A stretch of DNA of 64,000 nucleotides, taken from positions 89,218,001 through 89,282,000 of the forward strand of contig OZ320314.1 in NCBI GenBank assembly GCA_976226885.1, written 5' to 3'. Under the pieces are notes generated by a model. The model searched no databases and was not told where the DNA came from. It was given only the letters and a program-made list of their open reading frames with translations. The translations under genes and the position numbers were made by a program. Positions 9,721-64,000 of the stretch are shown here, piece by piece. The stretch is from Iphione sp. A-MEVVRFRX5 (Eukaryota). Numbering within the stretch: position 1 is the first letter of the stretch; the number at the start of each line of letters is the position of its first letter.

Positions 9721-10269
9721 GCGGAGGTGCTAGAATCAGAATGCTACAGAGGGAGCCGGGCCAAGGAGGCCAGGAAGAAGACCGGAGCCGATTTCCGGTG
9801 CCCCCTCCCCGCTGGTACAGGCGGGCCCAAGGATAAAGCTCTAGACCTCTGCTCCCTGCCCCGCGCCCCCCTCCGGCCGTATGGATTCCCCAAGGGTGGG
9901 TGGATCTGGTGGCTGCAGAACTTCGTATCCTGAGCGACCGGACTTGCCGAGCTCTCCAACTCCTCTACCTCCAGCGACCACCGCACGCGATGAGGGGGCG
10001 GGCCGGCCCAGTCCTAGGGTTCTACAGGGCCGTGAAGAGACTGCTTGGTCTACGGAGAAAATTGCAGCAGCGTTATGGGTGCCGGGCCACTAACCACTTG
10101 GTTCAGGTCCTGTGGAGGAAACTAGGAGAACGACGGCATCCAACTTGGAAGAGGCGCATAGTCGGCGGAGTTCGCCCTAGGCTCCGCCTGGAGTCCCCTC
10201 GCAGTCAGCGGAGTCCGCCTCGACAGCTGACTCCGGGCAGGAGAATTACCGCACTCCGCTCGGCATCGA

Positions 10270-10339
10270 CCAATCAGCACCAAGCGCAGGAATGCTGGCC
10301 CAATCAGAGACGGGCTGAGTTCTGGGGCCAAGGATATAA
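10270..10339 (+). promoter_or_regulatory. Candidate internal Pol II promoter for ORF3
   Basis: CCAATCAG at 10270 and 10300 (30 bp apart), TATAA at 10335, GC boxes upstream; ORF3 ATG at 10595. Confidence 0.55.
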
Positions 10340-10594
10340 GGAGGCGGCACTCAGGAGGCCGTTCGTACTGTCCACTGCCGCGCTCTGCCCCGCCTTCGAA
10401 GTGTTCGCTGGGCCTCACCGGAGTACGTTCCAGATTGTCCGCTGCCCGACGGCCGAGGCTGCATCGCTCCGCTACCGGAGTACGCCGAGAGTTCTCTTCA
10501 GAACTCACCTGGGCTATCGGAGTCCGCTACTCCACTACCGGAGTTCGCCCAAGCTACCAGAGTCCGCCCTGTTGAAGCCCGGGCGGAGGACAAG

Positions 10595-12670
10595 ATGCCG
10601 CAGGACGAGGCCCGCCTTTGCCAGATCTGTGGCTATACCACAGAGCACGCGTCCAACTTCAAGCGCCACAAGAGGAAGCATGCTAGGGAGGGGTTCGTAA
10701 GGATATGCCCTGTTCCTCGCTCCCGGGGGGCGCATTTCGGCCGTCGGGATGACTTCCGGTGGCACCTGGAGAAACAGCACGCCCAGGAGGCCGAGCGACC
10801 ACTGGAACTGGGCCAGTCAGTGGACGTGGTCTACATGGACCTCACCAAAAGAGAGATCATCCCCGTGCCGCCTGAGAAGGAAGCAGAGTACCAACGCCAG
10901 CGGAAGGTTGAAGCCTATGAGAGGACCAAGGAGCTGGCCATGAGCCGGGGGGAGACCCTGCCGACCCGGCCTAAGCTAGGACGTCTCCCTCCTTCGACGG
11001 CGCCAGCTGCTGCTGGGGCCCCACCACCCGAGGACTCAGATTCTGAGGAAGAAGAAGAGGAGGAGGAAGAAAAAGAGGTGGTGGAGACTCGCCAGCTTCG
11101 GCCTCGGACGGGAAGGGGCGCCCAAGTCTCTTCCACGGTGTCTACGCCCGGGGGATCGAGGACTCCTGCTACCCCGGTATCCATGGCTTCCATTGAGGCT
11201 CAGCTTTATGAACTGGACATGTCCCCCGGGGCTCCCCTTCGGGGAGTCGGACGAGGGATCCGGCAGCGGGAACCATCTCCCTCTACTTCCACGAGCTCCA
11301 TTGCGCCCGCCCTTTCCTCTATCCCTGGGGTGGCGTGGATCAGGGTATTGGCGAGAGGACGGGCCAGAATGATGTCACCGCCAGAGGAGGAAGACCCACT
11401 TACCCCTGGTCATGGCTGGGATCTGGCTGCTATGAGAGAGGAGGCCCGGGGAAAAAGGAAGTACCAGCCGCATACCAGCCCCATTACCCCGGCCAGCCTG
11501 CCTTCACTGGCGAAGAAGGGTGCCGCTTCGTCGACGATGTCTCCACTGCACCGAGCCTTGGTTACGTCCGGGATTAAAGGCCAGGGCTTTACCCCCCAGT
11601 CCACCCTAGGCTCTGCGGGCTCCTCCTCCTACAGCTCTGCGGCGAAGGAGTTGGACAAGCGGTTGGGAGAGGGCTGGGAGAATGTGGAGAGGTCCGAACA
11701 GCCCCGTGACGTCATAGTCATAGGGTCCGACCCAGACTTGGATGAGGAAGGAGGCGGAGGCCAGGATGAGACGGTCGCTTCTAGCACCCTGGCCACTGAG
11801 TTGAGCCATAGCCCTGAAGGCACTTGCGGCCGGGTGTGCTATGCTCGACTCGAGATGACTGGGGGAGTCATCGAAGAGGAGTCAGAGGAGGACTTACCTA
11901 CCGAAGAGGAAGCGGCAACTACCTTGGCGGAGCTCGGCGGTGGCCCATCTGCCTTCGAGGCGGAACCCCGGCCGGACTCCGGTGTCTTCCGGCCGGGGTG
12001 GAGTAAGTCAGTGGAATCCGGCCAAGGCAGAGTCCCCCCGGGGTCCCTCAGTCGGCAGGGCAAGACAGAACCACCGCCTGACACAAGCGTCCGCGGTTCG
12101 ATAAGGACGATGGAGTCTGTTAGCCCCCCAGCACTCCCGGGACGACGGGAGAAGGAGAGTCAGTGGCCAGACTCCCCTCCCACGGATAAGGAGGTTCCCT
12201 CCTGGGCACCCCCAGGACGACGAGAGGAGGAGGGGGAGCAACCGGCCCCTCCTCCACCGGACCTGGAGGTCCCCCCCCGGCACCCCCGGGATGAGATGAA
12301 GAGGGGGGGCAGCCAGCCCCTCCTCCGACGGACCAGGAGGTCCTCCCCTCGGCACCCCCGGGACGACGAGATGAAGAGGGGGGGCAGCCAGCCCCTCCTC
12401 CGACGGACCAGAAGGTCCTCCCCCCGGCACCCCCGGGACGACGAGAACGAGAAGGAGTATGACCCACTACCTCGGCGGGCCGAGAGGCCTTCCCCCCGGC
12501 ACCCCCGGGACGACGAGAGCAGACCACCCACTCCATGTTGGTGGAGCGACGCCCAGGGTTTATGGCTGGACTGTTGCGGTGAGACCAGGCGGTCCCGCCC
12601 TTGGCTACTAGCACACCAGCCCCGGCTGGACCCTTCCGCCCGGAGACGTAGTCAGGCGGGCCAGTACTAG
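10595..12670 (+). CDS. Gypsy-1 accessory ORF3: two N-terminal C2H2 zinc fingers plus a long acidic/Pro/Ser-rich disordered region; probably continued to 13043 before a frameshift
   Basis: 691-codon ORF with CQICGYTTEHASNFKRHKRKH and CPVPRSRGAHFGRRDDFRWHLEKQH (second Cys degenerate); lies between integrase and PPT inside the LTRs. Confidence 0.8.
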   Translation: MPQDEARLCQICGYTTEHASNFKRHKRKHAREGFVRICPVPRSRGAHFGRRDDFRWHLEKQHAQEAERPLELGQSVDVVYMDLTKREIIPVPPEKEAEYQRQRKVEAYERTKELAMSRGETLPTRPKLGRLPPSTAPAAAGAPPPEDSDSEEEEEEEEEKEVVETRQLRPRTGRGAQVSSTVSTPGGSRTPATPVSMASIEAQLYELDMSPGAPLRGVGRGIRQREPSPSTSTSSIAPALSSIPGVAWIRVLARGRARMMSPPEEEDPLTPGHGWDLAAMREEARGKRKYQPHTSPITPASLPSLAKKGAASSTMSPLHRALVTSGIKGQGFTPQSTLGSAGSSSYSSAAKELDKRLGEGWENVERSEQPRDVIVIGSDPDLDEEGGGGQDETVASSTLATELSHSPEGTCGRVCYARLEMTGGVIEEESEEDLPTEEEAATTLAELGGGPSAFEAEPRPDSGVFRPGWSKSVESGQGRVPPGSLSRQGKTEPPPDTSVRGSIRTMESVSPPALPGRREKESQWPDSPPTDKEVPSWAPPGRREEEGEQPAPPPPDLEVPPRHPRDEMKRGGSQPLLRRTRRSSPRHPRDDEMKRGGSQPLLRRTRRSSPRHPRDDENEKEYDPLPRRAERPSPRHPRDDESRPPTPCWWSDAQGLWLDCCGETRRSRPWLLAHQPRLDPSARRRSQAGQY
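12260..12520 (+). repeat. Coding tandem repeat (PRHPRDDE-containing units) inside ORF3
   Basis: CGGCACCCCCGGGA recurs four times; two ~63-bp units are nearly identical. Confidence 0.85.
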
Positions 12671-48972: not shown

Positions 48973-49858
48973 GTCTTGTTCCTATACTTAACTAACAACC
49001 TTGATTATCTTCTGTGCACGAGCCACGTTCACGATGTTCTTGAACTCGTCTGTTTCGTAAGCGCGGGAAAACAACCGCAACCGGAAATAGTTGCGACCAA
49101 TGAAATTGCGGAATACAAATTCACCAGGGAAACCTTCTGACGTCACACGGATCAACCTATTTACATACTTATGGGCCTGGCTCAAATTTGAGCGGACCCG
49201 TGATCGTGCGATCACGACTGATCTAGTACATTTGATCTCTGGGATCTATTGCGATTGAGGAACTACCCCCAGAACTGGCACTCCGTCTCAACCAGCCACC
49301 ATTCTGTCTACAGCACTTCGGCAGTAAAGTAAATGTTCCTTTACTCAATCTTGGCACTAGCTACGTAAAATGGCTCATGAAAACACTGCCTGCAGTAGAA
49401 AGGATATCAAAATCATATACCGTAAAGTGAAAGCATGTTCCCGTTCAGTAATTTAATGTTGGTGACACTATATAACATTGGTTATTCGAAAGATTGATAC
49501 CAGCAACAGACATGGTATTATGTACATGTATGAACATTGCTTGTTTTCACCGGTTCCACCTGACTGATCATTAAATACACGACTGTCGGCATTCCTAGAT
49601 CCTTACTTAAGGTATACCGTCTTGCGTCAGGAGGCATCTTCACACGGTCTGTCTAGTGAGCGCAAAGGTAAAAAGGGAAATCGCATCTGCCTCGTTCTAG
49701 TTCTGTGACGTCATTTTATCAGTGGGGGTTTCCACGTCGTTACAGCTCTACTGCATGCTTCAAGTCCCGACAGGCGAGGGTCAAAAACAAAAACGGTCCC
49801 ACCGGTGGCATTTGTCAGACCGTTCGCGTCGGTCAGTAGTCCAAGTTCAGCCGCCAGA

Positions 49859-52800
49859 ATGGCGGTGGACATAGCAAAGATCGGGAAAAATAACATCAAG
49901 TCCATTGCAACCGGGGAGGTGAGTACTGGATTCAAGCGTTCGTCACTAAAGGTTCCAGAAGTGACTGGGGTAGGATGTTGATTACATAACAACAGAACTT
50001 TTTTCGATCACCGGGTACATAACAAACTTTAGTAGTTTTATTTCCCAAGCGTTTGTAGCATCCTGCTAAGTCAAAAAAGTTTCCACTGTATAACAACCGT
50101 GGATATTTTTTCTTAAAACTACAGGCGTACCGGTACCTGCAGCCACACCCAGTATTTTATAAAGTCTACAGCGGTATGCCGGTATGAGAGGGATTTGGCG
50201 ACGTTTCGCCCTCAAACCGTTTCGTCCTCGCCAGTTCGCCCTCAAACCAGTTCGCCCTCAAGACGTTTCGCCCTCATTCACAAAAATTCTATTTCATTAT
50301 TACTTAATTGCTTATTTCATTGAATTGTGATACGAGTTAACAAAAATTAATTGTTATGAGTGTATTTTACTTCATAGACGAGATACTCATTCTTAGCTCC
50401 ACAGGTACACTTGAGCAACTTACCACCTTCCTGCCTACCCGGCCTCCTCTGGCCCTGTAATCATGCAACTTCGCGCTACAAAGCTTTTATGTGCCCGGCC
50501 CCGCCCCGCTGGCTTTAGCGGTGATGAGAGCGAACCTTGGATATTACCTTTCCTTTTTCATAGTATGGGGACTTGGCATCGTTTAAGAACTTTTATTTGT
50601 GGATGAGGGCGAAACGTCTTGAGGACGAACTGGTTTGAGGTCGAAACGGCGAGGGCGAAACGGTTTGAGGGCGAAACGTCGGTACTTGATGAGAGGTCAG
50701 ACGAGTTCCTGATTGATTTTATTCTCGAACGAAGTTTAACAGTGATGGTATAACAGCAGAAGATCATATAAGGTCATTTGACATCAAAGATTACAATTCA
50801 GAAATCATTCTTGTAAAGATAATTTAAGTATCAATATCCCCATTCCATTTGCAATAAATAGCTGTAGGATTTTCATTTGACCATACCTTGATGTATCCCA
50901 GACAACAACATGTGATTATCAGTGGAGGTCATATTTACTTATGTAGCAGATCATATATGACTTCCACTTAATGCAAGGGGTAGTGCTGCGCAGAAAAGGG
51001 GAGGGACCTATCCTTTGAAGTCCAAGCAAGTTTGAGCTGACATGTAAGGGTGTTATATCATCTCCTCTAAGAGATCAGTTGGAGAAATCTCTGACTTGGT
51101 GTTTGAAACCTCCTCCTTTCTTCTCCGACTAAGCTTAGCTGGTGATTGTATAAAAGATGTCATCAGACCTACGTTTTCTTCTTGCAGGATTCGTCAAAAT
51201 AAGGGCAATTAAATCCCTTTACATTTGTTATTTGTTTTTAAAGATTAAAGTGCATTTATGTAAATGGAAAGAATATTGCCTTTGTGGTACTATTTATCCT
51301 AGTTTCGACTGATGCGTTATGCTGAATGATTGGGAAGCTAACGTAAGGTGGAAATGTTAGTATACTTCATATAAAATGACTCTCTTTTCCCTCAGTCTCA
51401 TGACAGATATTTTGTCCATGTGATTTTAATAAAAACCCTCATAACATTGGGAGTGTTTTTAATAACCTGAACCAAATATGTACTGACCATGAGGTTAACA
51501 TAAGTTATCAACTCTGCAAATTTCAAGTTTTTATCTCTCACAGATAGAGCTATCGTGTCCACAGATACGGACAAATGGTTGGATGATCAGAAAGTTGGAG
51601 GGTGGCACAGCATCACTTGTATGGTCTCACCCACTTTTGGGCAGGCGACCATTAACTTAGTTACTTTGTCTCATTACAAAGGCACACATGTCCCATCTTA
51701 CCGTCAAGTATCAATTTATGAAAATAGAGTATCGGAAACGGACATAGTATTTCATATTTTAGGCATCAAAGAATGATCTCATTGTGGGTCTGGTCTCAAT
51801 GTATTGTCATGTTGATGTTTGACATTCATCGTGCAGGCACGCTAACGTACCAAGCGTGTTATAGATAAGAATACGTACGGGATGCTGTACCGAGAGTCCG
51901 TCTCTGGTGGTGTAGTTATTGCAGTTCAATGGCTGTGTGGCTTTCCTTCTAACAGCCTCTTTGTGCATACACACGTGCACGCATGCAATCACGAGCAGTG
52001 AAAGTGGGCCACAAATCTTAGAAAATGTTCCGGTTCCAGCAATGTAGCTGTTGTCGATATACAGTGGAGTCTTGATTTCCGACCAGTGGTCAGGTCCAAC
52101 CTGAAATGGTCGTAATAGCAAGTTTGGTCGGAAATTGAGACTCCACTATAATAAAATCAAGACTTTGGGTCCTACCTCAGGTGATCGTAATAGCAAGAAT
52201 GGTCGGAAATTGATGTGGTCGCAAATTAAGACTCCACTGTACATGTGCATGTTTTTAGTTTGCAGTACAAATAACAGGAAACGACCCCACTATAAAAGGG
52301 ATGACCTTTGAAAATCTTATCACACTGCTATCAGATTCTTCATTGATAAGGAGGCAATTACTTTGATAATGCTACTGTTTGCATTCCGGGGAGGGAAATA
52401 GTAAAGGTTCTTTATCGAAAACAAATAGAGTGTTAAATGAAGGACTCAGTTTAAAAAAAAAGCCCCAAAAGTATCACGTGCTACTTTTTGGTATTTTTGT
52501 GTCATTCATATTTTGCACTAGAACCATCATATTTCACCTGCCGACTCTTCGGTCAATATTATGCCTCATTGTTGCTACAGTACACCAAATCGACACATTA
52601 TAACGTGTACACAATCAGTGCATTTTTTTTGTCATATTGAAAAATAGTCTCTTTACCATTTGATAGGAATGATCTGTAAATTCACTGGCATTCAGCAGAT
52701 AAAGGTATCAACTAGCTTTAAAGGTCGCTATATTATAAAAGGACTTAACCTGTATTTCTAGGTGGTCTATTTCACAATGTTGAAGAAATTTCTGCAGGGA

Positions 52801-53966
52801 AATTTCTGAGGGAACCTTTACCATTTAGGTCAACTTTTCATTGTGGTAGGTAACCCTAGGATCACTCTTCTTAGTATAATTTTTTTTATGTGTGAGCTAC
52901 TGCAGAAACCTTTTGCCTCACAGTTACTCAAGGAGAGGCCGAGGATCCATTTAAGACCATAAGAATGCAGGATCCAGAACACTGCATTTGTAATTTAGTC
53001 TTTATCTATGCATGTGACCTCTATGATGCAGGTTCCATTTGCATCTTTGCAACTAGTATATTCAATCAAATGTGTCATGGTAAAATGTCTGTTGTCTCTG
53101 ATGAAAAATCTCAAAATTTTAGTGTTACCACGGCCTATGGTGGTTATATGGGATATGTCTGTACTTATTTAACTCCCAACAAATCTGTAAGTTGGAATTC
53201 AGACATGTAAAAGTGCAGTGCCCATATGACATTAAGACACTTACGTAAGTTCAGTCATATATAATGTCTGTCCGTCAGATGGTTTCATATTGCTAAATAT
53301 TGGTGTGTGCCCATGTACGTGTTGCACATTGTACGTTGACAACAACCTATCCATCCTTATCTGCGTTTTTCCTGGCTTATTGTCCCCCGCCTCATAGAGG
53401 GGGGGACATTAGGAATGCTACGGGCTGGTGTCCTGACCATCCGTCACACTCTTGTGGGTCTTATAAGTCTCAAACCCTTCACTCAAAAAAACTGATTTTA
53501 ATATATGATATTGATATATATGGCCCCATGGCACTGGGTAATTTTGGTAGTAATCCAAGTATTTTGAAGGTGAAATTAGGCCAATTTTACTCTTTTCCTA
53601 ACACACCTACAAACATACATATCTGGTTCAGGGGTTCCTAGGTCTGACAATGCACATACATACACACTCAGTGCTCAGTCATGCAGAACCGAGGGTTTGT
53701 AGCAGTCTGGTGCTCAGTGAGGCAGAACCGAGGGGGCTGTGCTCGGTCAGGCAGAACTGAGAGTTGTAAACCTGAAGGACTTAAACAAGTCTAGCCAACC
53801 ACCCCCAAAACAAGGTGCCAATCAAGGTGGTTGTAAGGAGACAGAGACACTACACACTACACACACACACACACTCACTCACTCTCTGTAACTCTCATTC
53901 TCTCTTTCCACTCTCATTCTCTCTTCATCTCCCCCTCTCTCTCTCCCCCTCCCCTCTCTCTCTCAT

Positions 53967-54012
<46 letters not shown>

Positions 54013-57000
54013 TCCCCCCTCCCATCTCTCTGGGCAGTTGATGGCGGGGGACAATAGACCTCACAGGTCCACACTCTTGTGTTTAATAAGCACCTTTCAG
54101 CTACCCCACCTCAAATAGTACCCCAGACCCTCCAACCCTCTCTCAGGAACTTGTGGGACTGTTTACTTCTAAACAGTTGAATCAAATTGTCTGATTTTCA
54201 ATAATCATTCTGTTGTTCTAAATATGGACGTTTGTTACTGGTTTACTCTCCGTTTCCCTTTCTCTCTGTCTCTGTCTCTCTGTGCATCTCTTTCTGTGTA
54301 AATGTACATATGTTAACATTGTAGGTGGCATGGGAGTAGGGGCCTGAGAGATATTTCATAGTCTTCTCACCGAAGCATCGCCAATGAGAAATGCTTGGTT
54401 GGCTGGCTGGCGGGCGACAATAGACCTCGCAGGTCCACATCCTCATTTCTGTAGAATTAGTACTAGATCATCATATGTTCCCGTGATGTCCAACACTTGT
54501 GATGTACAAAAAAACTGTCAATGCAGAGACAAACAAATGGACACTGTTCCTAACTCCGATGCTTCAGAAATACAGACTTGACAGAACCATGTCTCCTCCT
54601 CACCAACTGCTCTTGATTGCAGATGGTGAAGCTCGAGTCTCTTTGGTCTGACCGAGCTGTTGTGATCACCTTCCTGCGACGCTTTGGATGACAGTTTTGT
54701 CGGTTGTATTCCCGCAAGTTGTCCACCCTGAAACCACAGCTAGACGCTGCCAATGTTGGTATGGTTGGTGTCGGGCTCGAGGAATTAGGGGTCGAAGACT
54801 ATGTTGCAGGGAAGTATTTCGATGGGGGTAAGTTGCACGCTATATTTTTTCCTGTGATAATTTTCATCACACCGTGGGTGTTCTTGACCGGACAGAATTT
54901 TTGTAGATAGACCAAATTATTCCTTGTTCTTTCGCATTACATCTGACGATCCTTTCTTAAATACCTTCAGGCTATAGCCAGATTCTCACAAACAGTTCCT
55001 TTTACTAACAAATTTTGCTTCTTCGCAACACACTCCCGAGTATTTCTTATTAGGAGAAGCAACTTCAGTCAGAATATGTTGACACTGTATCGTTTGAATC
55101 TTTTAGTCAGTATTTTAGTACATTTCTCTCAGTGTATCATTTTTTCTTCCGCAATCTTTTCTCATATTGTGATTCTCTGCTTCAGATTTGTATATCGATG
55201 TCAATAAGAAAACCTACAAGGACATGGGCTACAAGAGGTAAATATGTATATTCTGATTTCACAGGTGACATCTAACTAGAATACACAACTGTAGTAACAT
55301 ATATTTATATATCTATTATGTACATTTACTGGACATAGTCTGGAGTCTTCATCCAGATTTGAACAAAGTGCATGTTTATAAAAAAATATGAACATTTGCT
55401 AGATCTGTATATTAAGAATTTTATACATGAACTCTGGTTCGCCGCCATTCTGGTAGGAGGGGCAGCATGTGATATCACATGTTCCTACAGGTGGCACGGC
55501 AGTATGCGCATTCCTACAGCTTTGATGCTAGACGATACGTCACCCGGGTGCAGTAAGTTATCGATCCCTTGTCGATCATTATCGATCTTTTGTCTGTTTT
55601 TCGAACTGATATATGAGGATTAGTGTTTATAGACGCGCTTGAGCGTTTTTGTCTCTCAGGTTTGCTTAGAATTGCTTCGCTTTTCTAAAACCTACCCATC
55701 CACGGCTTGGGCGCCCCGGATGGCGAGCTCTCACACACTCGTAGAGTTAGGCCGGAGGTTGTGGTGACTTGTCTCGTGAATTAATCTAGTGTTGTCTAAG
55801 GTTTTAAGGAGGTTTTGAGTGGTTGTCCATCTTCTGAAACTCCTTCAATCAGCATGTCGTCACCGCCTGAGACTGAAACGACACCAGACACAGGTACCGT
55901 TGAACAGACCAGTGATAAGACTGTGTCTAGAAAGAAAGGATCGTCTAAATCCAATCCCGTGAAAGGAAAAGACACCCTCAAACCTGTCACCAGAAGCAAC
56001 AATGAAGAGAAAACTGAGTCTGGAGAAATTAATATGACGTTGCTACACGCAATCGAATCGCTTAATGCCAACGTAGCTGGTTTTCGTGATGAGTTTCAAG
56101 GTAGTCTCTCACAAGTTGCTGACACCATGAATGCTGGGTTTCAAGGCCTTATGAAGAACCAGATTACACTGACCCTACTCCTACTGACGATGATCAATCT
56201 GAAGTGTCAGTTACAGGCATTCTGGACGAAATGATTCCTTCACCTAGGCCAATCCATGCTATTTCGGATTTGGAGGATGCTGAGGATGAGGATCTCTTAA
56301 CTCCAGGGGGAGGCCCTACAAGATGACTTAATCAATAAAGATGTGAAAGGCTCGGTAGCTCACTTCGTTAACAAGGTTCAACGCAGACTGGTGTCACCAG
56401 AAGAGCTTACTCAGAAAAAGAAGCAATACCCAGGCCAGGAAATTGCAAGAAATTACAAGTGGTCAAGGTAAATGAAGCTTTGTGGCCTGCTCTTGCTAAG
56501 CCATTCAGAGGGCGAAAAAGGAATTTTCAGCATGTGCAAACGATTTTGCTTACAGGAGAGACAGCACTCCTTCAGGGCACTCTGCAAGTGTTTCAACACG
56601 CTAAGGAGTCTACAGAGTTGAAGCAAGCATCTAAGTGTTTAATGCTTAATGCCGTACAGGGCTCCTCTCCCAAGAAATGACTTCAGAACGACACCTCAGC
56701 AGACACCTAGGCCCCCATTCCAGCCATCGGACCAGAGGCCAGATTTTTCGGTAAGGCCGGCCAAGAAGTAGATGAAGGACACTCAGGTCCTTGGGCTGGC
56801 AACCTGAAAAATCATTTTAAAATGTGTTAGAAGTTAACATCTGACTCTGACATTCTGAATACTATTTTAGGCCTTAAGTTAGACTTCTGTCGCCAGCCCA
56901 AGCCTAGACCCTTTCTCAGACCGTTGAAATTCTTCCCTGACGAAGTCATTGAATTAAATGAAGCAGTTAGGGAGTTACCGGCCACTGAAGTCATCAGGGT

Positions 57001-60000
57001 TGACTATCCTCCATCGCCTTTCCAGTCTAGAATATTCTCTAGGAAGAAGCCTGATGGGTTTACCAGGCTGATTCTGGATGTGTCAGAGCTGAACAAGGCA
57101 CTACCGTACATACACTTTAAAATGGACACTTTCCAATCTGTCGTACAACACCTCTATTATAACTGTTGGTTAACATCCATCGATCTTTAAAATGCTTATC
57201 ACATGGTTCCCGTACATCAAGCCCATCTGAAATTCTTAGCCTTCTCCTGGGGTAACCGATTTTTCAAATATCATGACCTTCGGACTGTCACCAGCTCCTA
57301 GAATCTTCACTAAACTGGTAAAACCCATTTTAGCACTGCTCCATGATCAGGGTCACGATGTGATTGCCTACCTTGATGACTTCTTAATCTTAGGACAATC
57401 TCCAGATGTTTGTCAACGCTCTTTTCAAGCGGTTGCTAGACTGTTATCTACTCTTGGCTTCCAAATCAATTGCGCAACAGCTAGTCTTCCTGGGATACCA
57501 CCTGGACATAGTAACTATGCAGATAAAGCCTACTCCCCAAAAGATTGCAAATGTCCTCAGTAAAATTGATCACCTATGGGCATATCCAACACAAACAATC
57601 AGATTTGTTACATCGCTTACGGGGACTCTGGTGGATTTGACCAAGGGGTCCCAGTACGGCCTTAGCCACTATAAGGCGTTGGAGAAGGCCAAGATGACGG
57701 CACTGGTACATAACAGAGGAGATTTTGACAAACAAATGGTGTTGCCAACCCAGAGTTACATTGACCTCCAGTGGTGGAGGGACAACATCGAACACACTCA
57801 TCGGCCGATTAGAGTTCACGCTCCACCCACCGTAATGTTCACTGATGCCTCTAATGAAGGCTGGGGTGCAGTCATCAATGCGGATGCTACAGGGGGTAGA
57901 TGGTTGCCTATGGAAGCAGCGAGTCACATTAATACCCTTGAGTTAAAGACAATCCTCCTAGGACTGAAAGATTTTTTTCACGGGAGTCCACCATTTCCAC
58001 GTCTTCATCAGATCAGACAACACAACAGCTATTGCATATGTCAACAGACAGGGCGGAGTCAGATCGCCAACATGTGACTTATTAGCTTGAGACATCTGGG
58101 AATTTGTAGGATGCCATCGTGGGTGGATACGAGCAGCTCACATCCCAGGAGTGGAGAACGTCACAGCTGACTACTTCTCTCGCGTATTCAATGAGGATAC
58201 AGAATGGCAACTACACCCAAAATTATTTCAACAAATAACTAACAGTTCAGGTATCCCTGATGTGGATCTGTTCGCATCACGAGCTACTGCCCAGCTTTTG
58301 ACATATGTGAGCTGGAGACCAGACCCTGCAGCATCCTACATCGATGTATTCACCCTAGACTGGTCGAAATTCAAGTTTGCTTATGCTCTTCCCCCGTTTT
58401 CTCCTATTAATAGAGTATTGCAGAAGATACTCCACGAGCAGCCTCGAGTGATCCTGGTGATGCCAGCGTGGAAGACACGACCAGCATTCGGTCACATCCG
58501 ACAGCTTCAACACGTTCAGACCATGTTCTTTCCCAAGAGGCCACACAACCTGATCAACGTGTACAACAACAGAGATGTCAGGGGCATAAACAACGTCCCT
58601 TTGGTTGCAGACATTTGGTGGCAGACATACTGTACACTGAAGGGGATTAATCCTTTGAAGCCTAAGATCAAAGAGCCATTGATGTTTTTGCATACTTTAT
58701 TCAAGGGGGGTCTGGGATGTAGTGCTTTAAATACGGTGCGCAGCGCCCTATCAGCTATTCTTAAGCCTTACAAAAAAATTCCTTTTGGGCAACATCCCCT
58801 CACATCTCGGATTTTGGGGGGGATGTTCAATCTACGACTGTCACAAGCCCGACTAGACCACACCTGGGATGTAAATACAGTGTTGGAGTTCCTTCGCCAT
58901 TGGGAACTGTTGGAGTCCCTTTCTCTTAATCAGATTACCTTGGAGTTCACTGTTCTCTTGCTATTGGCTTCGTGTGGAAGGTTGCAAACCGTTCAAAACA
59001 TAGATTTAAGAAATGTTCATTACCTAGGACAGAATAGGGTTCAGATTAATTTCATTTGCCCAGTTGTCAGACACCTTAGAGAGTATATCAGACGGACTCA
59101 GAACATTAGAGCAGATGAGCAGGGCCTCCTCATCAGCTATGTTCCTCCATATAGTACAGTGGTCACCCCAACTATAGCACGTTGGGTCAAAGAAGTCCTC
59201 CATAGGGCTGGGATTGACGTCTCCCTATACACTGCTTATAGCACCCGGGCGGCGGCAGCGTCTAAGCTACATACAGCTGGTGTACCACTAGCTGACATCC
59301 TTAGAAAAGGTATGTGGTCTGACGAGAGCACATTCAGACACTTCTACTTGAAACACATCATCTAACTCAAGTTGGGTAATCTGTTAAAAAAAATCAGTTC
59401 AAAACACCCATTTGTGCAGTCTCAGGGGGTTTTACCTCTTCGTTAGCACCCCTGATAACCTAAACATATCACATGCCACCGCTCCTACCGGAATGGCAGT
59501 GAATCAGAGTTATGGAGTTACCTAAAGGTTCCCTGGAAGGTGACTGCAACTCTGGTTAGCTTAGGCATGAAGGGGAGCAGCGCTGCATGTGCCCTTCCCC
59601 TTTAGGCTGGTGTTACTGATACCCACCACTGTAAATGATTTCATTTGCTCACATGCAGCAATGACTTTTTTCCAGACTGTTTGCAGACCACCTTAAACTA
59701 TTCATCAGTCTGTGTTGATCTTTGTGAAGAATCAGGGATCCTAACAAAGAGGATCTGAAGGACTGCCGCACCACCTGTAGGAACATGCTATATCACATGC
59801 AGCGCCCCTCCCCTTCATGCCTAAGCTAACCAGAGTTGCAGTCACCTTCCAGGGAACTGCAGGTAATTCCACAATTATGATTCGGATAAGAAAGAAAATC
59901 AATAAAATAGCTGGACATTAACACGAAGATAGTATGTGTCAGAAGAGCCACAAATGTCATCATCTTTATGCTGGTAAGAAGGCCTGTCAGCCAGTAGCGT

Positions 60001-62568
60001 TAACTTGATAAATAGTGCTCCCATATCAATCACTTCCAGTATCTGTTCCTATTCAGTGTCCTCTCGCCTGTGGTTTTCCCCATTACCACAGCTTTTCTGT
60101 GCTCCTTTTACTGTAGAATTCCAGACAACGATTCATACTATCCCGACTTGAGAGGTGACTAAGCATCCACCTCTTAATGCATTGTTAAGAATTTGATTGA
60201 AATTCCTAAACGTCTAGTGATCTTCAGATTCATATGAGATTTTCCGGCTTGAGGCTCTGTGTACCTGCGAAATTTCTGTACCCGTGTACCTGTGAAGAGC
60301 CTTATCATGCACACACTAGGAGACTGTGGTCTGAGTTCAGGTCTGATCAGAAGATACCACTTGCATGTTTTCGTAAACAGGTATATTGATGGGATGGGAT
60401 TTGGGGTTAGAAAACCACGGGCTGGAGATAAAAACAAAACGCCGGAGTGGTAACAGGATGATTATTGTAGGTATAAAGATGATCCAGGTCTAGACAAAGA
60501 GATATTGCTAGTGATGAAAAAGCAGTGGACTGGAAATGTGTGGAATGCAGAAGTATAGAAACAGCACACGGTTAGCAATCAGGGAGTAATAGAGTGATAA
60601 AAAAAACATTGGGAACTGATGGATTAGAGCTAACACAGTCTTCGACGTGGAGAGATTACTTCTAAAGAAAACTATTACTGATGTAGAAATGTGTAGATTA
60701 TTCGATGTATAAAGATATTGCAAGGATTGTCTGGGCCCAGAACATGGAGGTGGCTAGGAACATGTCAGTGTAAATTCTCAAGCCTCTGCCTTATACATGT
60801 CGGGGTTGAGGATTTATGTTCCATAGAGATATTTAAATTACTTATGGAGGACAAAGTTTCAGCAGTTCTGTTTCCTTTATTTTGTCTAGGTTTGGCATAT
60901 TCTCAGCGATTGGGGCTGCATTAGGCTCCATTGGTCGCCGGGCAATGGGCGAGGTGAGAGAGAGTAAAAAGATGCTTCCACCTTGTTTGAGCACCGCCAT
61001 CACAATGGCAGAACAACATAAAGACGAGTAATTGTAATGTTTCGCAAAATGAATGAGTCTTTTCGCATTGTGGTGTCACTCTTCGACTATAAACACACAT
61101 GTACTTTGCCTCGAAACCTCCTCTTCGATAGTTGATATATGGTGAAACTGTTTTGAACATTTCAGGCCAAAAAGCTTGGGATCTCAGGTAACCTGTCCGG
61201 GGATGGATACCAGAATGGTGGAACACTTATCGTCAGCAAAGGTCAGCAATTTCCCCGACTCTTAACATAGTCTTCATAGTCTTTAAATCTTTGTCCCCTG
61301 CCTCATAGAAGGGGGGGGGGCATTAGGAATGCTGCTGGCTGGTATCCTGACTATCTAACACACTCTTGTCGGTCTTATAAGTCTCAAACACTTCACTAAA
61401 AAAATGATTTTAATATATGATATTAGTATATATGGTCCCATGGAACTGGGTAATTTTGGTAGTAAAGTATTTTGAAGGTGAAATAATGACAATTTTACTC
61501 TTTTTTCTAACACACCTACAAACATACATACTTGGTTCAGGAGTTCCTAGGTCTAATAATGCACATACATGTACACATACACACTCACCAATATCTCCCT
61601 TCTACCAGTATCAGCTTGTAGCAGTCTGGTGCTCAGTGAGGCAGAACTGAGGGTGTTGTTCTCAGTCATGCAGAACTGAGGGTTTGTAGTAGTCTCATGC
61701 TCAGTAAGGCAGAACCGAGGATGCTGTGCTCAGTCATGCAGAACCAAGAGTTGTAATGTAAACCTGAAGGACTTAAACAAGCCCAGCCAACTACCCCAAA
61801 ACAAGGTGCCAATCAAGTGGTTNNNNNNNNNNNNNNNNNNNNNNNNNNNNNNNNNNNNNNNNNNNNNNNNNNNNNNNNNNNNNNNNNNNNNNNNNNNNNN
61901 NNNNNNNNNNNNNNNNNNNNNNNNNNNNNNNNNNNNNNNNNNNNNNNNNNNNNNNNNNNNNNNNNNNNNNNNNNNNNNNTCTGGGCAGTTGATGGTGGGG
62001 GACAAGAGACCTCAAAGGTCAACACTCTTGTTTTTTTACATTGACAAATATTATATGTAATACTCAGGGTCCATGTATGTGATTGGGTACAAACTACAGT
62101 TGGCTGACGATTTGTGATTCCGTCTAGAGAATTCTTACCACCCTATTAAAGGCTACCTATGTTTTATCTTGCCTTTCAATGATCACAGTTTTCAGAGGAC
62201 AAATCATTGAACTGTTTAACTTCTTGTGCTCTTCTTTAGCCGTAGTATCAATTGATAGTTAGCCTTTCAGGCTGATATCTATTAGTCAACATCCGCAACT
62301 GCTTCTGCCAGAACAATATGCCAATGCTCAGGATTTAGTAATGGCTCGAATTCCAACAGTTATGCATTTAAAGTGATATTGTTACTTGACAGAGGGGAAG
62401 GTGCTGCTTTCGTTCAAGCAGGACAACCCATCAGAGCATGTGCCACTCCAGGATGTCCTGACAGCCCTCAACATTGAAGGTGGTCCACCGCCACCTCTGG
62501 GTGAAGCTGGTGCGGAAGGAAAGCCAGAAGTAGTCTGCAATGAGGATGTGTGTGAAATAAAGAAATAA
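49859..62568 (+). CDS. PRXL2B: Peroxiredoxin-like 2B / prostamide-prostaglandin F synthase homolog (SelU2 lineage), Sec-containing, ~210 aa
   Basis: Exons 49859-49918, 54623-54827, 55186-55237, 60890-60953, 61166-61241, 62393-62568 join in frame: MAVDIAKIGKNNIKSIATGE MVKLESLWSDRAVVITFLRRFG-U-QFCR...GVGLEELG...DLYIDVNKK...GNLSGDGYQNGGTLIVSK...VLLSFKQDNP; collinear with vertebrate PRXL2B (FAM213B) as I recall it. Confidence 0.9.
50199..50681. mobile_element. MITE with long TIRs built of TTCGCCCTC units (intron 1)
   Basis: 50199-50277 is the near reverse complement of 50603-50681. Confidence 0.75.
52062..52239. mobile_element. Short Tc1/mariner/pogo-type MITE
   Basis: TA|CAGTGGAGTCTTGATTT ... 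AAATTAAGACTCCACTG|TA. Confidence 0.7.
53380..54082 (+). mobile_element. Helentron/HINE-like repeat, copy 1
   Basis: 5' TGTCCCCCGCC...GGGGGGACA, internal (CT)n, 3' GGCGGGGACAA plus GACCTCACAGGTC hairpin; a related copy lies at 61290-62030. Confidence 0.55.
54689..54691 (+). other. In-frame TGA at the first position of the UxxC motif (selenocysteine codon)
   Basis: Aligns with the first Cys of the CxxC in PRXL2B (LRRFGCVVCR); the reading frame is intact on both sides; SECIS downstream. Confidence 0.85.
55428..59872 (+). mobile_element. DIRS1-like tyrosine-recombinase retrotransposon in intron 3 of the host gene, degenerate
   Basis: Inverted terminal repeats (~55457-55500 vs ~59763-59810); internal complementary region ~59475-59595 pairing with both termini; gag-like ORF, RT (YLDD), RNase H (FTDASNEGWG), methyltransferase-like (DLFAS...YALPPF), tyrosine recombinase (YSTRAAAAS, WS..STF..FY). 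Confidence 0.9.
56800..59365 (+). pseudogene. DIRS RT-RNaseH-MT and tyrosine recombinase coding regions
   Basis: Motifs as above; frameshifts and stops (e.g. TAA near 57190); the catalytic HSTR appears as YSTR. Confidence 0.85.
61290..62030 (+). mobile_element. Helentron/HINE-like repeat, copy 2 (contains the assembly gap)
   Basis: Colinear and similar to 53380-54082. Confidence 0.55.
61823..61979. other. Assembly gap (N run)
   Basis: Run of N at the position of the microsatellite in the paralogous copy. Confidence 1.
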
Positions 62569-62611
62569 AGTAAGACATGACAAAAAACACCTCGGACAGT
62601 CTGCAGATATA

Positions 62612-63232
62612 CAGTACACTCTCTCCATTCCGGACACCCTCCGTTCTGCTTCAAATCGTCCACATTGGAGACGTGTCCGCATTGGAGATCACTACAGGGG
62701 GGTCAAACTAGAAAATAAAATCCCTTTCTCACTCTCTCTCTAACCAGTTAAGGTCCAGAAAGTACTGAATTTGACCAGTAAAAGTCCTAAAAGTCCTAAA
62801 TTTGACCAGTAGAAGTCCTAAAAGTACTGAATTTGACCAGTAAAAGTCCTAAAAGTCCTGAATTTGACCAGTAAAAGTCCTAAACGTACTGAATTTGACC
62901 AGGTAAAGTCCTAAAAGTACTGAATTTGACCAGTAAAAGTCTTAAAGTACTGAATTTGTTATTCATATCTACCTTTTAAAAATGACTTCTGGAGCCTCTC
63001 TGAGGCCCCAAAGTCGCGCGACAACACCTCGTCTACACTGGTTATTCATATCTATCTTTGAAAAAGGACTTCTGGAGTGTCCACAGACAGACGCTCTTTA
63101 AAATTAGTCGTCCGCATTCAAGACGTTCCCTTATAATGGTTAACTATAGGAACTCAGTCGGTTCTGCGTCAAATCGTCCGCATTGTAGACGCGTCCGCTT
63201 CTGAGACGCGTCCGCAGGCAGGGAGTGTACTG
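62612..63232. mobile_element. Tc1/mariner/pogo-type MITE with internal ~30-bp tandem repeats, in the 3'UTR intron
   Basis: TA|CAGTACACTC ... GAGTGTACTG|TA; CTGAATTTGACCAGTAAAAGTCCTAAAAGT repeats at 62760-62960. Confidence 0.75.
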
Positions 63233-63554
63233 TAGTTCCTTTAAACCACAGATGATATCGTTCTATTTCAAATGTAAGTTATGTGACAGAAGCATGGCTG
63301 ATATACTCAGTCCTTAATTGATTTTTCATGGATAGCTGTTGTGAAATTTCTCTTATTAACTATGAGTGATCGGTGGAGTTACTGATTTAATACAAGGTCA
63401 TTTTGTAAAATAGTGTGGAGCACCCTATCCTTTCAGTCCGGAATGCAAATTTGACATTGATGTCTTTTCTTTTCTTACAGGTGTTAGGTCCAGGTATGTA
63501 GATCAGGTGGGCCCTGTTGGAATGAACCAAACACTTGACCGTTAGAAGGGTTCG

Positions 63555-63627
63555 GGATGCCATTTATGATGGGAGAGTGTCAAACTGTTCACTGCAGACC
63601 ACTCTTCCTGACTTCTCCTGTGCCTCC
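63555..63627 (+). promoter_or_regulatory. Eukaryotic SECIS element
   Basis: ATGA(63566)-T-GGGAGAGTGTC-AAA...GAC-C-ACTCTTCC-TGAC: AUGA/GA quartet, 11-bp helix II with one bulge, AAA 12 nt after AUGA, lower helix GGATGCCA/TGTGCCTCC. Confidence 0.85.
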
Positions 63628-64000
63628 ATGAGTGTCAATGGACAGGCCATCTTGGGACCCTTCTGTTAGTTGATTGTTGGTTGTTGCAACACTGCTCCCC
63701 AAGTCTACGTATGAAAGACTACATGTGGCAAACTGACAGAAATCCACGAACCAGAAAGTATGACAGAATTAGACAAATCGTATCTATTCTGCCAAGTTTC
63801 CATTTGTAAGTATTTAAGGTCTTACAAGAATGCCATTGTAACAGGATGTTAAGTATGAGCGGTATCATATATCAGTGTAAAGTTAATTCATGCTACTTTT
63901 TATTAACATGAAGCCAAAGGGTCGACATTATTGTACCCCACATCCGACCGCAGAGCCTAAATGTTCCTATTTTTGATGAAAGCATTCCTAATACAGGAGA

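What the first reader, a model, noticed from the sequence alone, without database searches (positions are those of the whole stretch)
49859..62568. Selenocysteine version of PRXL2B (prostamide/prostaglandin F synthase family)
Seen: the only in-frame stop in a six-exon gene is a TGA at the first redox position (FLRRFG-U-QFC), and a SECIS follows. Established: mammalian PRXL2B (FAM213B) has CxxC, and the wider SelU family has Sec forms with a scattered distribution. Inference: a true UxxC selenoprotein that standard annotation would truncate or call a pseudogene; the ORF track starts after the TGA.
Basis: partly seen in the sequence, partly recalled or inferred. Interest (0 to 1): 0.72.

Follow-up and report, generated by a model that had tools for sequence, protein, structure and literature searches.

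The report
Selenocysteine prostaglandin-F-synthase-type gene in a worm
This is an intact six-exon gene, most likely from an annelid worm, for a PRXL2B/SELENOU3-type redox enzyme that has selenocysteine (a recoded TGA) in place of the catalytic cysteine. Such forms were already reported in invertebrates, including an annelid, in 2012, so it corrects an annotation and is not a new kind of gene.

Summary
There is a six-exon, GT-AG-spliced gene on the + strand (49859-62568, 210 codons). Its only in-frame stop is TGA at 54689-54691. That codon aligns with Cys44, the catalytic nucleophile of human prostamide/PGF synthase (PDB 9US9/9USA). The N gap (61823-61979) lies wholly inside intron 5, and homologues leave no room for a missing exon.

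- **The TGA is not a local error.** The same codon is TGA in six other sequences, including a nemertean, an intronless (mRNA-like) shrimp-type contig and two close relatives. Synonymous sites are near saturation and both sides are under purifying selection.
- **SECIS.** A canonical element (ATGA, 9-bp helix, AAA, mini-stem, TGA) lies at 63557-63625, outside the finding's range. It is single-copy and 1 kb past the stop, because a 625-bp MITE sits in the 3'UTR.
- **Genome context.** The genome has tRNA-Sec. Its PRXL2A-type paralogue also has TGA. No Cys copy of this gene was found.
- **Host.** The mitochondrial gene order suggests an annelid.
- **Novelty.** Jiang et al. 2012 already list Sec-form SelU3 (the PGF-synthase clade) in Capitella, Lottia and Nematostella, so this is a new member of a known kind.
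- **Limits.** No sequencing runs were listed, so the reads, expression and 3' end are untested.

The parts
49859..49918 (+). Exon 1: start codon plus 19 codons (MAVDIAKIGKNN...), donor GTGAGT
   Evidence: Sequence read. It aligns to the N-termini of full-length PGF-synthase relatives.
54623..54827 (+). Exon 2: carries the redox motif. It has 22 codons before the TGA and 45 after, all in one frame
   Evidence: Sequence. Pfam AhpC-TSA_2 matches the post-TGA part. The pre-TGA part aligns to human PGFS 23-43 and the post-TGA part to 46-89.
54689..54691 (+). In-frame TGA, read as the selenocysteine codon (U of UQFC). It is equivalent to catalytic Cys44 of human PGFS
   Evidence: The same codon is TGA in L011, L012, L013, L014, L015 and L026.
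55186..55237 (+). Exon 3 (LYIDVNKKTYKDMGYK plus split codons)
   Evidence: Sequence; collinear hits on relatives.
60890..60953 (+). Exon 4 (FGIFSAIGAALGSIGRRAMGE). This is the least conserved exon. By its position between E3 and E5 it falls in the flexible Tyr108-Asp124 stretch of the human enzyme
   Evidence: Sequence. There are weak but collinear hits, for example on P0032 residues 101-119. Flexibility of the human region is from PMC12938796.
61166..61241 (+). Exon 5 (AKKLGISGNLSGDGYQNGGTLIVSK)
   Evidence: Sequence. Pfam AhpC-TSA_2 positions 78-102. Human PGFS residues 129-153.
61823..61979 (.). Assembly gap (157 N) inside intron 5. It is not part of the coding sequence, and I did not fill it or look it up
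   Evidence: Intron 5 spans 61242-62392.
62393..62568 (+). Exon 6: C-terminal 57 whole codons and TAA. It ends ...VVCNEDVCEIKK
   Evidence: Sequence. It is 52% identical over 56 residues to the C-terminus of the Lineus protein, including the VVC.EDVC motif. It is single-copy in the genome.
62610..63234 (.). A 625-bp non-autonomous transposon (MITE) in the 3'UTR. It has 15-nt terminal inverted repeats, TA flanks and an internal 31-bp tandem array
   Evidence: the repeat finder pair I1 and family D1. Forty scored copies at 78-99% identity out of 4253 first-look candidates in the genome.
63557..63625 (+). SECIS element: ATGA 63566-63569, helix 2 arms 63571-63579 and 63600-63608, apical AAA 63582-63584, mini-stem, 3' TGA 63609-63611
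   Evidence: Rfam SECIS_1 full-length match at 22.1 bits, below the gathering score of 35. The MFE fold shows helix 1, internal loop, 9-bp helix 2 and mini-stem. My own pattern scan finds 2 loci in 128 kb of window against 0.7 in shuffles. The region is single-copy.

Best explanation
This is the single-copy orthologue of prostamide/prostaglandin F synthase (PRXL2B, also called SELENOU3) in what is most likely an annelid genome. It is encoded as a selenoprotein. During translation the UGA at 54689-54691 would be recoded to selenocysteine by tRNA-Sec, guided by the SECIS in the 3'UTR at 63557-63625. That gives a 210-residue thioredoxin-fold protein with a U-Q-F-C active site. By analogy with the human enzyme, Cys44 attacks the endoperoxide of PGH2 and Cys47 resolves the intermediate. 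Here the selenolate would be the attacking nucleophile and Cys+3 would form a selenenylsulfide, which a thiol system such as thioredoxin then reduces. What is shown: the gene structure, the position and conservation of the TGA, the SECIS motif and the presence of tRNA-Sec. What is inferred: actual Sec insertion, the presence of the SECIS in the mature mRNA, and the substrate. The substrate could be PGH2 or prostamide H2 but could equally be other peroxides in a worm.
For: There is an intact six-exon model with canonical splice sites and no stop other than the TGA. The TGA aligns to human PGFS residue 44, with Arg40/Arg41 (RR of FLRRFG) and Cys47 kept. The roles of Cys44, Cys47 and Arg40/41 are described in PMC12938796. 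The same codon is TGA in L011, L012, L013 and L014 (genomic contigs), in L015 (a 559-nt intronless contig with 127 in-frame codons after the TGA) and in Lineus longissimus L026. Many database relatives show 'W' at this site. In the three I checked against their DNA, the codon is TGA. Against these relatives pS is 0.58-0.91 and pN is 0.17-0.28 on both sides of the TGA. A SECIS with every canonical feature follows. For the targeted question (one family, one strand, 1.4 kb) the Rfam E-value rescales to roughly 3e-5 by my own arithmetic. The SECIS region is single-copy. The Lineus orthologue has a pattern-positive SECIS about 330 nt after its stop. Two tRNA-Sec genes score 80.8 and 78.8 bits. The paralogous PRXL2A-type gene on C26 also has TGA at the same site (RRPG-TGA-SLC). 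Neither exon 2 nor exon 6 has a second copy in the genome, so there is no Cys back-up. Clade assignment rests on three results. Exon 2b is 73% identical to the Lineus 'prostamide/prostaglandin F synthase-like' protein against 41% to the genome's own PRXL2A-type exon. The nearest named relatives are all PGF synthases. The only clear PDB hits are human PGFS; one weaker unrelated hit to exon 2a had E 0.41.
Against: There is no read or RNA evidence, because the look-up of sequencing runs listed no run. So the TGA base call, the splicing and the 3' end are unverified in this species. The Rfam SECIS_1 score of 22.1 bits is below the gathering score of 35, and the hit does not appear at E<=1 when 15 kb is searched. 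The SECIS lies 997 nt after the stop. AATAAA motifs lie at the stop codon (62556, 62564) and inside the MITE (62714), while the next ones after the SECIS are at 64313 and 64376. A short 3'UTR isoform would therefore lack the SECIS. The fold energy of the SECIS is no better than shuffles (z -0.11), which is usual for such short elements. Rfam did not recognise the Lineus SECIS candidate. Each exon's Pfam score on its own (22.9 and 22.5 bits) is below the 27-bit cut-off.
Confidence: 0.87

Rival explanations
1. The gene is intact as DNA, but the 625-bp MITE insertion in the 3'UTR, or polyadenylation at the AATAAA motifs near the stop, separates the coding region from its SECIS. Sec insertion would then be inefficient or lost in this species, leaving a gene that is weakened or on its way to loss.
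For: A MITE sits at 62610-63234 between the stop and the SECIS. AATAAA motifs are at 62556, 62564 and 62714, and none follows the SECIS before 64313. No RNA data are available.
Against: SECIS elements are known to work at distances of a kilobase or more from the stop (my own knowledge). All six exons, all splice sites and the SECIS core are intact. The gene is the only copy of this clade in the genome. AATAAA inside A-rich coding ends is common and is not in itself a polyadenylation site.
Confidence: 0.07
2. The TGA is an assembly or sequencing error, or a recent nonsense mutation of a TGC/TGT cysteine codon. The gene would then be an ordinary CxxC PRXL2B or a young pseudogene.
For: TGA differs from TGC or TGT by one base. 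No reads could be laid on this stretch.
Against: The identical codon is TGA in six other sequences from other taxa, while synonymous sites around it are near saturation. A matching SECIS lies downstream on the right strand. The sister paralogue in the same genome uses TGA at the same site.
Confidence: 0.03
3. The functional product starts downstream of the TGA, as RefSeq models of relatives assume. That would give a protein without the first redox residue and with a non-catalytic role.
For: RefSeq and GenBank models in Lineus, Penaeus, Homarus and Meganyctiphanes start right after the TGA.
Against: In those species the start is simply the first ATG after the stop. Here the first Met after the TGA is 24 codons downstream, past the CxxC cysteine. 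The 22 codons before the TGA and exon 1 are conserved at the protein level and under purifying selection, which a downstream start does not explain.
Confidence: 0.03

Closest known systems
Sec-form SelU3 of invertebrates (Ct.SelU3 of Capitella teleta, Lg.SelU3 of Lottia, Nv.SelU3 of Nematostella; Jiang et al. 2012, BMC Genomics 13:446, PMC3473315)
   Same: It is the same subfamily. The paper equates SelU3 with prostamide/prostaglandin F synthase. Sec sits at the first position of the redox motif and a SECIS lies in the 3'UTR. One of the reported species is an annelid. The paper also notes that Cys forms of this clade are confined to deuterostomes.
   Different: The species is different. I could not align this gene to those sequences because they are not available through the tools. 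In Capitella the paper lists only this one Sec SelU, whereas here the PRXL2A-type paralogue is also TGA-encoded.
Human prostamide/prostaglandin F synthase, PRXL2B (PDB 9US9, 9USA; PMC12938796)
   Same: It has the thioredoxin-like AhpC-TSA_2 domain. Arg40 and Arg41 are kept, the resolving Cys47 is kept, the G-N-L-S-G-D block is kept, and the exon pieces are collinear with it.
   Different: Human has Cys44 where this gene has TGA (Sec). The XX dipeptide is QF here and VV in human. This gene's C-terminal tail, with a VVC.EDVC motif, found no PDB hit at all, human PGFS included. Activity was not tested.
SELENOU1 / PRXL2A Sec forms of fish, birds and other animals (Mariotti et al. 2012, PMC3316567; 2026 vertebrate survey, PMC13134290)
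   Same: It is the same family, with the same position for Sec (UxxC) and a SECIS-dependent mechanism.
   Different: It is a different paralogue. This genome has its own PRXL2A-type gene on C26 (RRPG-U-SLC), which is only 41% identical over the compared exon. In vertebrates all Sec forms belong to SELENOU1, and this gene is of the SELENOU3 branch.
RefSeq 'prostamide/prostaglandin F synthase-like' of Lineus longissimus (P0193, on OU343003.1)
   Same: It is 73% identical over exon 2b and 52% over the last exon, with the same FLRRFG-TGA-Q.C context and the same C-terminal VVC.EDVC motif.
   Different: It is annotated as a 166-residue protein that starts after the TGA. That gene is compact (under 2 kb), and the exon 5 and 6 equivalents lie in one exon. 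Its SECIS candidate lies about 330 nt after the stop with no transposon in between.

Membership tests
PRXL2B / SELENOU3 (prostamide/prostaglandin F synthase) clade of the PRXL2 family | AhpC-TSA_2 (PF13911) thioredoxin-like domain | tested here: met
   Exon 2b hits profile positions 2-37 (22.9 bits) and exon 5 hits 78-102 (22.5 bits), in order. Each exon alone is below the 27-bit cut-off.
PRXL2B / SELENOU3 (prostamide/prostaglandin F synthase) clade of the PRXL2 family | Redox motif C/U-x-x-C preceded by the conserved Arg-Arg | tested here: met
   The context is FLRRFG-TGA-QFC. It aligns to human residues 40-47, RRFG-C44-VV-C47.
PRXL2B / SELENOU3 (prostamide/prostaglandin F synthase) clade of the PRXL2 family | Closer to PGF-synthase-type proteins than to the PRXL2A and PRXL2C paralogues | tested here: met
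   Exon 2b is 73% identical (73.6 bits) to Lineus PGFS-like against 41% (28.5 bits) to the genome's own PRXL2A-type exon. A separate PRXL2C-like locus exists on C10. The named nearest relatives are all PGF synthases. I built no tree, because that would need the joined model.
PRXL2B / SELENOU3 (prostamide/prostaglandin F synthase) clade of the PRXL2 family | Reduction of PGH2 or prostamide H2 to the F2-alpha product | not testable with these tools
   This needs an enzyme assay.
Eukaryotic selenoprotein gene | In-frame UGA aligned with Cys or Sec of homologues, with conserved coding sequence on both sides | tested here: met
Eukaryotic selenoprotein gene | SECIS element downstream on the same strand: AUGA, helix 2 of 9-12 bp, unpaired AA, 3' GA and helix 1 | tested here: met
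   All motif features are present at 63557-63625. It is one of only two pattern hits in the 64-kb window on both strands, against 0.7 expected.
Eukaryotic selenoprotein gene | SECIS reaches the curated Rfam SECIS_1 gathering score | tested here: not met
   The score is 22.1 bits against a gathering score of 35, and nothing appears at E<=1 in 15 kb. The model also gave no hit on the pattern-found SECIS candidate of the Lineus orthologue. That candidate is itself unconfirmed, so this shows little about the model's sensitivity. I take the sub-threshold score as a caveat, not an exclusion.
Eukaryotic selenoprotein gene | Sec-decoding machinery in the genome | tested here: met
   Two tRNA-Sec genes score 80.8 and 78.8 bits against a gathering score of 47. 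A second TGA-containing SelU paralogue is present.
Eukaryotic selenoprotein gene | SECIS present in the mature mRNA; Sec actually inserted | not tested
   No sequencing run was listed, so read laying could not be used. Labelling and mass spectrometry are bench work.

The most novel reading that the evidence does not exclude
Sec may be the ancestral and still prevalent state of the PGF-synthase (SELENOU3/PRXL2B) clade across protostomes. TGA at this codon was found here in a probable annelid and a nemertean, and the decapod and krill models start just after the Sec site. Public annotation cuts the active site off these proteins in each case I inspected. If so, the picture that 'all Sec-encoding SelU genes are SELENOU1' holds for vertebrates only. 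Work on invertebrate prostaglandin synthesis, for example in shrimp reproduction, may have been using truncated or mis-spliced models of a selenoenzyme.
Probability: 0.55. Interest if true: 0.35.

Novelty: new member of a known kind. Interest (0 to 1): 0.2.

Why it matters
For this genome it is an annotation correction. A standard pipeline would start the protein after the active site, splice around it, or call the gene broken. The real product is a selenoenzyme, and it is the only gene of its clade in the genome. More broadly, the checks show the same error in RefSeq or GenBank models of a nemertean and several crustaceans. That matters to anyone studying invertebrate prostaglandin synthesis or counting selenoproteins. 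It does not open a new question. Sec forms of this clade in invertebrates, including an annelid, have been in print since 2012.

Tried and rejected
- **Rfam on 15 kb** (49000-64000) at E<=1 found nothing. The SECIS shows only when a short stretch is searched.
- **Sequencing runs.** The look-up of sequencing runs on the last exon, 3'UTR and SECIS listed no run, so read laying could not be used.
- **Naming the species** with the 404-residue retroelement ORF gave only unnamed hits at 44% identity or less.
- **Accession look-up.** A paper search for the accessions of the two closest relatives found nothing.
- **Protein searches.** The search seeded with the spider protein P0019 returned mostly spiders. 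The one seeded with P0022 was more useful.
- **Second SECIS-like hit.** A pattern hit on the minus strand 6.4 kb past the window end (L017:6405) was rejected. It lies inside a retroelement ORF and Rfam gives no SECIS hit there.
- **Paralogue and L011 SECIS.** I found no SECIS for the PRXL2A-type paralogue within 10 kb downstream of its second exon, or in the 20-kb L011 contig. Those genes probably run on beyond the fetched DNA.
- **PRXL2C-like locus.** I did not find its redox exon.
- I never joined the exons. There was therefore no full-length protein search, no whole-protein Pfam score, no structure prediction and no phylogenetic tree of the full protein. All comparisons were made exon by exon.
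- **The N gap** was not filled or looked up.
Full report
**What is there.** The + strand between 49859 and 62568 carries a six-exon gene. I read the exon borders from the sequence.

| Exon | Coordinates |
|---|---|
| E1 | 49859-49918 |
| E2 | 54623-54827 |
| E3 | 55186-55237 |
| E4 | 60890-60953 |
| E5 | 61166-61241 |
| E6 | 62393-62568 |

All five introns begin GT and end AG. The exons total 633 nt, which is 210 codons plus a TAA stop. The only in-frame stop is TGA at 54689-54691, in the middle of exon 2, in the context FLRRFG-TGA-QFC.

**The assembly gap.** The only run of N in the window is 61823-61979. It lies inside intron 5 (61242-62392), 581 nt after the E5 donor and 413 nt before the E6 acceptor.
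- E5 ends after the first base of a codon, and E6 supplies AG to make GAG.
- On human PGF synthase, E5 covers residues 129-153.
- In Lineus the equivalents of E5 and E6 lie in one exon. Five residues separate 'LIV' from 'K.LL' there, against four here.
- E6 and E2 each occur once in the 1.18-Gb assembly.

The gap therefore hides no coding sequence, and the two sides belong to one gene.

**What the TGA corresponds to.** I searched exon by exon.
- The 21 residues before the TGA align to human prostamide/PGF synthase residues 23-43 (PDB 9US9/9USA).
- The residues after it align from position 46 onward.
- The TGA therefore stands at residue 44. The Cys three positions later is Cys47, and the RR of FLRRFG is Arg40/Arg41.
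- The 2026 structure paper describes Cys44 as the residue that faces the PGH2 endoperoxide, Cys47 as its partner, and Arg40/41 as strictly conserved (PMC12938796).
- Pfam places exon 2b and exon 5 on positions 2-37 and 78-102 of AhpC-TSA_2.

**Is the TGA real and meaningful?** No sequencing run was listed for this DNA, so I could not lay reads. Comparative evidence stands in for them. A search of 1.8 billion representative proteins with the 45 residues after the TGA gave 113 hits. Many start exactly after the Sec position. Others carry 'W' there. I pulled the underlying DNA for six of them.

| Locus | Source | Context at the TGA |
|---|---|---|
| L011 | 26-kb ENA contig | RRFG-TGA-PFC |
| L012 | NCBI assembly; one of the two closest relatives (71-76% identity in exon 2b; exon 2a 86% in L013) | FG-TGA-QMC |
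| L013 | NCBI assembly; the other closest relative | FG-TGA-QMC |
| L014 | Logan contig | RRFG-TGA-PFC |
| L015 | 559-nt intronless contig; penaeid-shrimp type by its 82-94% identity to Penaeus proteins; reading frame runs 127 codons past the TGA | — |
| L026 | Lineus longissimus | FLRRFG-TGA-QMC |

Against these relatives the proportion of synonymous differences is 0.58-0.91, while the non-synonymous proportion is 0.17-0.28, both before and after the TGA. A codon that stays TGA across that much divergence, flanked by protein-level conservation on both sides within one exon, is a coding codon. It is not an error or a fresh nonsense mutation.

**The SECIS.** It is not inside the finding's coordinates. 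It lies at 63557-63625.
- Rfam's SECIS_1 model aligns end to end at 22.1 bits. This is below the gathering score of 35, with E = 0.03 for a 181-nt search against all families.
- Every invariant is present: ATGA at 63566-63569, a perfect 9-bp helix 2, AAA 12 nt after the core, a mini-stem, and TGA at 63609-63611.
- The MFE fold reproduces helix 1, internal loop, helix 2 and mini-stem.
- A 15-kb search at E<=1 does not list it, which is what the scaling of E-values predicts.
- For the targeted question (one family, one strand, 1.4 kb) the E-value rescales to about 3e-5. This is my own arithmetic.
- A simple pattern-plus-pairing scanner of my own finds two loci in the whole window on both strands. 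This is one of them. Shuffled sequence gives 0.7 hits on average.
- The 241 nt around it are single-copy in the genome.
- The same scanner finds a candidate about 330 nt after the stop of the Lineus orthologue, though Rfam does not score that one.

**Why the SECIS is a kilobase away.** The stretch 62610-63234 is a 625-bp element with 15-nt terminal inverted repeats, TA on each flank and an internal 31-bp tandem array. It has at least 40 scored copies at 78-99% identity elsewhere in the genome. It is a MITE inserted into the 3'UTR. Without it the SECIS core would lie about 370 nt after the stop, much as in Lineus. AATAAA motifs sit at the stop codon and inside the MITE. The next ones after the SECIS are at 64313 and 64376, just past the window. 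Whether the mature mRNA includes the SECIS is therefore inferred, not shown.

**Genome context.**
- The assembly has two tRNA-Sec genes well above threshold.
- A family search finds two other PRXL2-type loci. One is PRXL2A-like, on C26. Its redox exon reads RRPG-TGA-SLC, so it is also a Sec form.
- The other is PRXL2C-like, on C10. I did not find its redox exon.
- Exon 2b is 41% identical to the PRXL2A-type exon and 73% identical to the Lineus PGF-synthase-like protein.
- The nearest named relatives are all prostamide/PGF synthases: spiders, insects, ticks, a sea star with Cys, decapods and a nemertean.

The gene therefore belongs to the PRXL2B/SELENOU3 branch.

**Host.** Contig C89 is a 15,544-bp mitochondrial genome. 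All protein genes lie on one strand, in the order cox1, cox2, cox3, nad6, cob, atp6, nad5, nad4, rRNAs, nad1, nad3, nad2, with tRNA-Gln after cox3. ATA stands where relatives have Met. From my own knowledge this is the annelid ground pattern. Other agents' notes on this genome also call it an annelid. Those notes are unchecked and are not independent proof.

**Comparison with what is known.**
- Jiang et al. 2012 (PMC3473315) define SelU3 as the prostamide/PGF synthase subfamily.
- Their supplementary table lists Ct.SelU3 (Capitella, an annelid), Lg.SelU3 and Nv.SelU3 as Sec-containing. They state that all Cys forms of SelU3 are in deuterostomes.
- The vertebrate surveys say that all Sec forms there are SELENOU1. 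That is consistent with this result, because this is not a vertebrate.
- The gene is therefore a new member of a known kind.

**Misannotation of relatives.** I saw direct evidence that current annotation mishandles the clade.
- The Lineus RefSeq model starts at the ATG two codons after the TGA.
- Penaeus, Homarus and Meganyctiphanes models start right after it.
- A Penaeus vannamei model removes the site by a false intron.

**Mechanism (inferred).** The UGA is recoded by tRNA-Sec, guided by the SECIS. The selenolate at position 43 of the worm protein attacks a peroxide or endoperoxide substrate. Cys46 of the worm protein forms a selenenylsulfide. A thioredoxin-type system regenerates the enzyme. 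The substrate in a worm is unknown. PGH2 is the analogy from mammals.

**Limits.** There is no read-level or RNA evidence. The SECIS score is below Rfam's curated threshold.

Noticed in passing
window 55800-59400 (+), inside intron 3: A DIRS-like retrotransposon. A gag-like ORF lies at 55815-56234, an RT/RNase H ORF at 57406-58077, and a 404-residue ORF at 58151-59365. Database relatives of the last ORF carry the tyrosine-recombinase domain PF00589, and the best is only 44% identical. The ORFs look open.
   Followed up: partly
window 62610-63234: A TA-flanked MITE with 15-nt terminal inverted repeats and a 31-bp internal tandem array. It is abundant in the genome, with 4253 first-look candidates and one copy 99% identical on the same chromosome. 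That suggests recent activity.
   Followed up: partly
G000:C26:18937224-18937367 (L005:7224-7367) and L002:1492-1626: The PRXL2A/SELENOU1-type paralogue of this genome also has TGA at the first redox position (AVRRPG-TGA-SLCRE, then a GT donor). Its SECIS was not found in the 10 kb I fetched downstream.
   Followed up: partly
L026 (Lineus longissimus OU343003.1), 9932-10939: The RefSeq protein 'prostamide/prostaglandin F synthase-like' (166 residues) is an N-terminally truncated model of a Sec gene. Conserved exons and FLRRFG-TGA lie just upstream of its annotated start. Penaeus, Homarus and Meganyctiphanes models show the same truncation.
   Followed up: yes
L012 and L013 (NCBI assemblies GCA_013332915.1 and GCA_013332895.1): In the two closest relatives an extra intron splits the exon just before FG-TGA. 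This genome and Lineus have that stretch in one exon. The species of these assemblies could not be named with the tools.
   Followed up: no
G000:C4:89642397-89642808: Three short cox1-like fragments lie in a nuclear chromosome, two of them with TGA inside. This is probably a nuclear copy of mitochondrial DNA.
   Followed up: no
G000:C89 (15,544 bp): A complete-looking mitochondrial genome with the annelid-type gene order on one strand. ARAGORN in its default bacterial mode found only two tRNAs.
   Followed up: partly
L017:438-2027 (-), which is 0.4-2.0 kb past the window's end: A 530-residue open frame begins MSSPKRRELCLAEKVKLIQ. It looks like a Tigger/pogo-type transposase. A second retroelement ORF lies at L017:6209-7396 (-). 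The nearest downstream neighbour of the gene is therefore transposon DNA.
   Followed up: no
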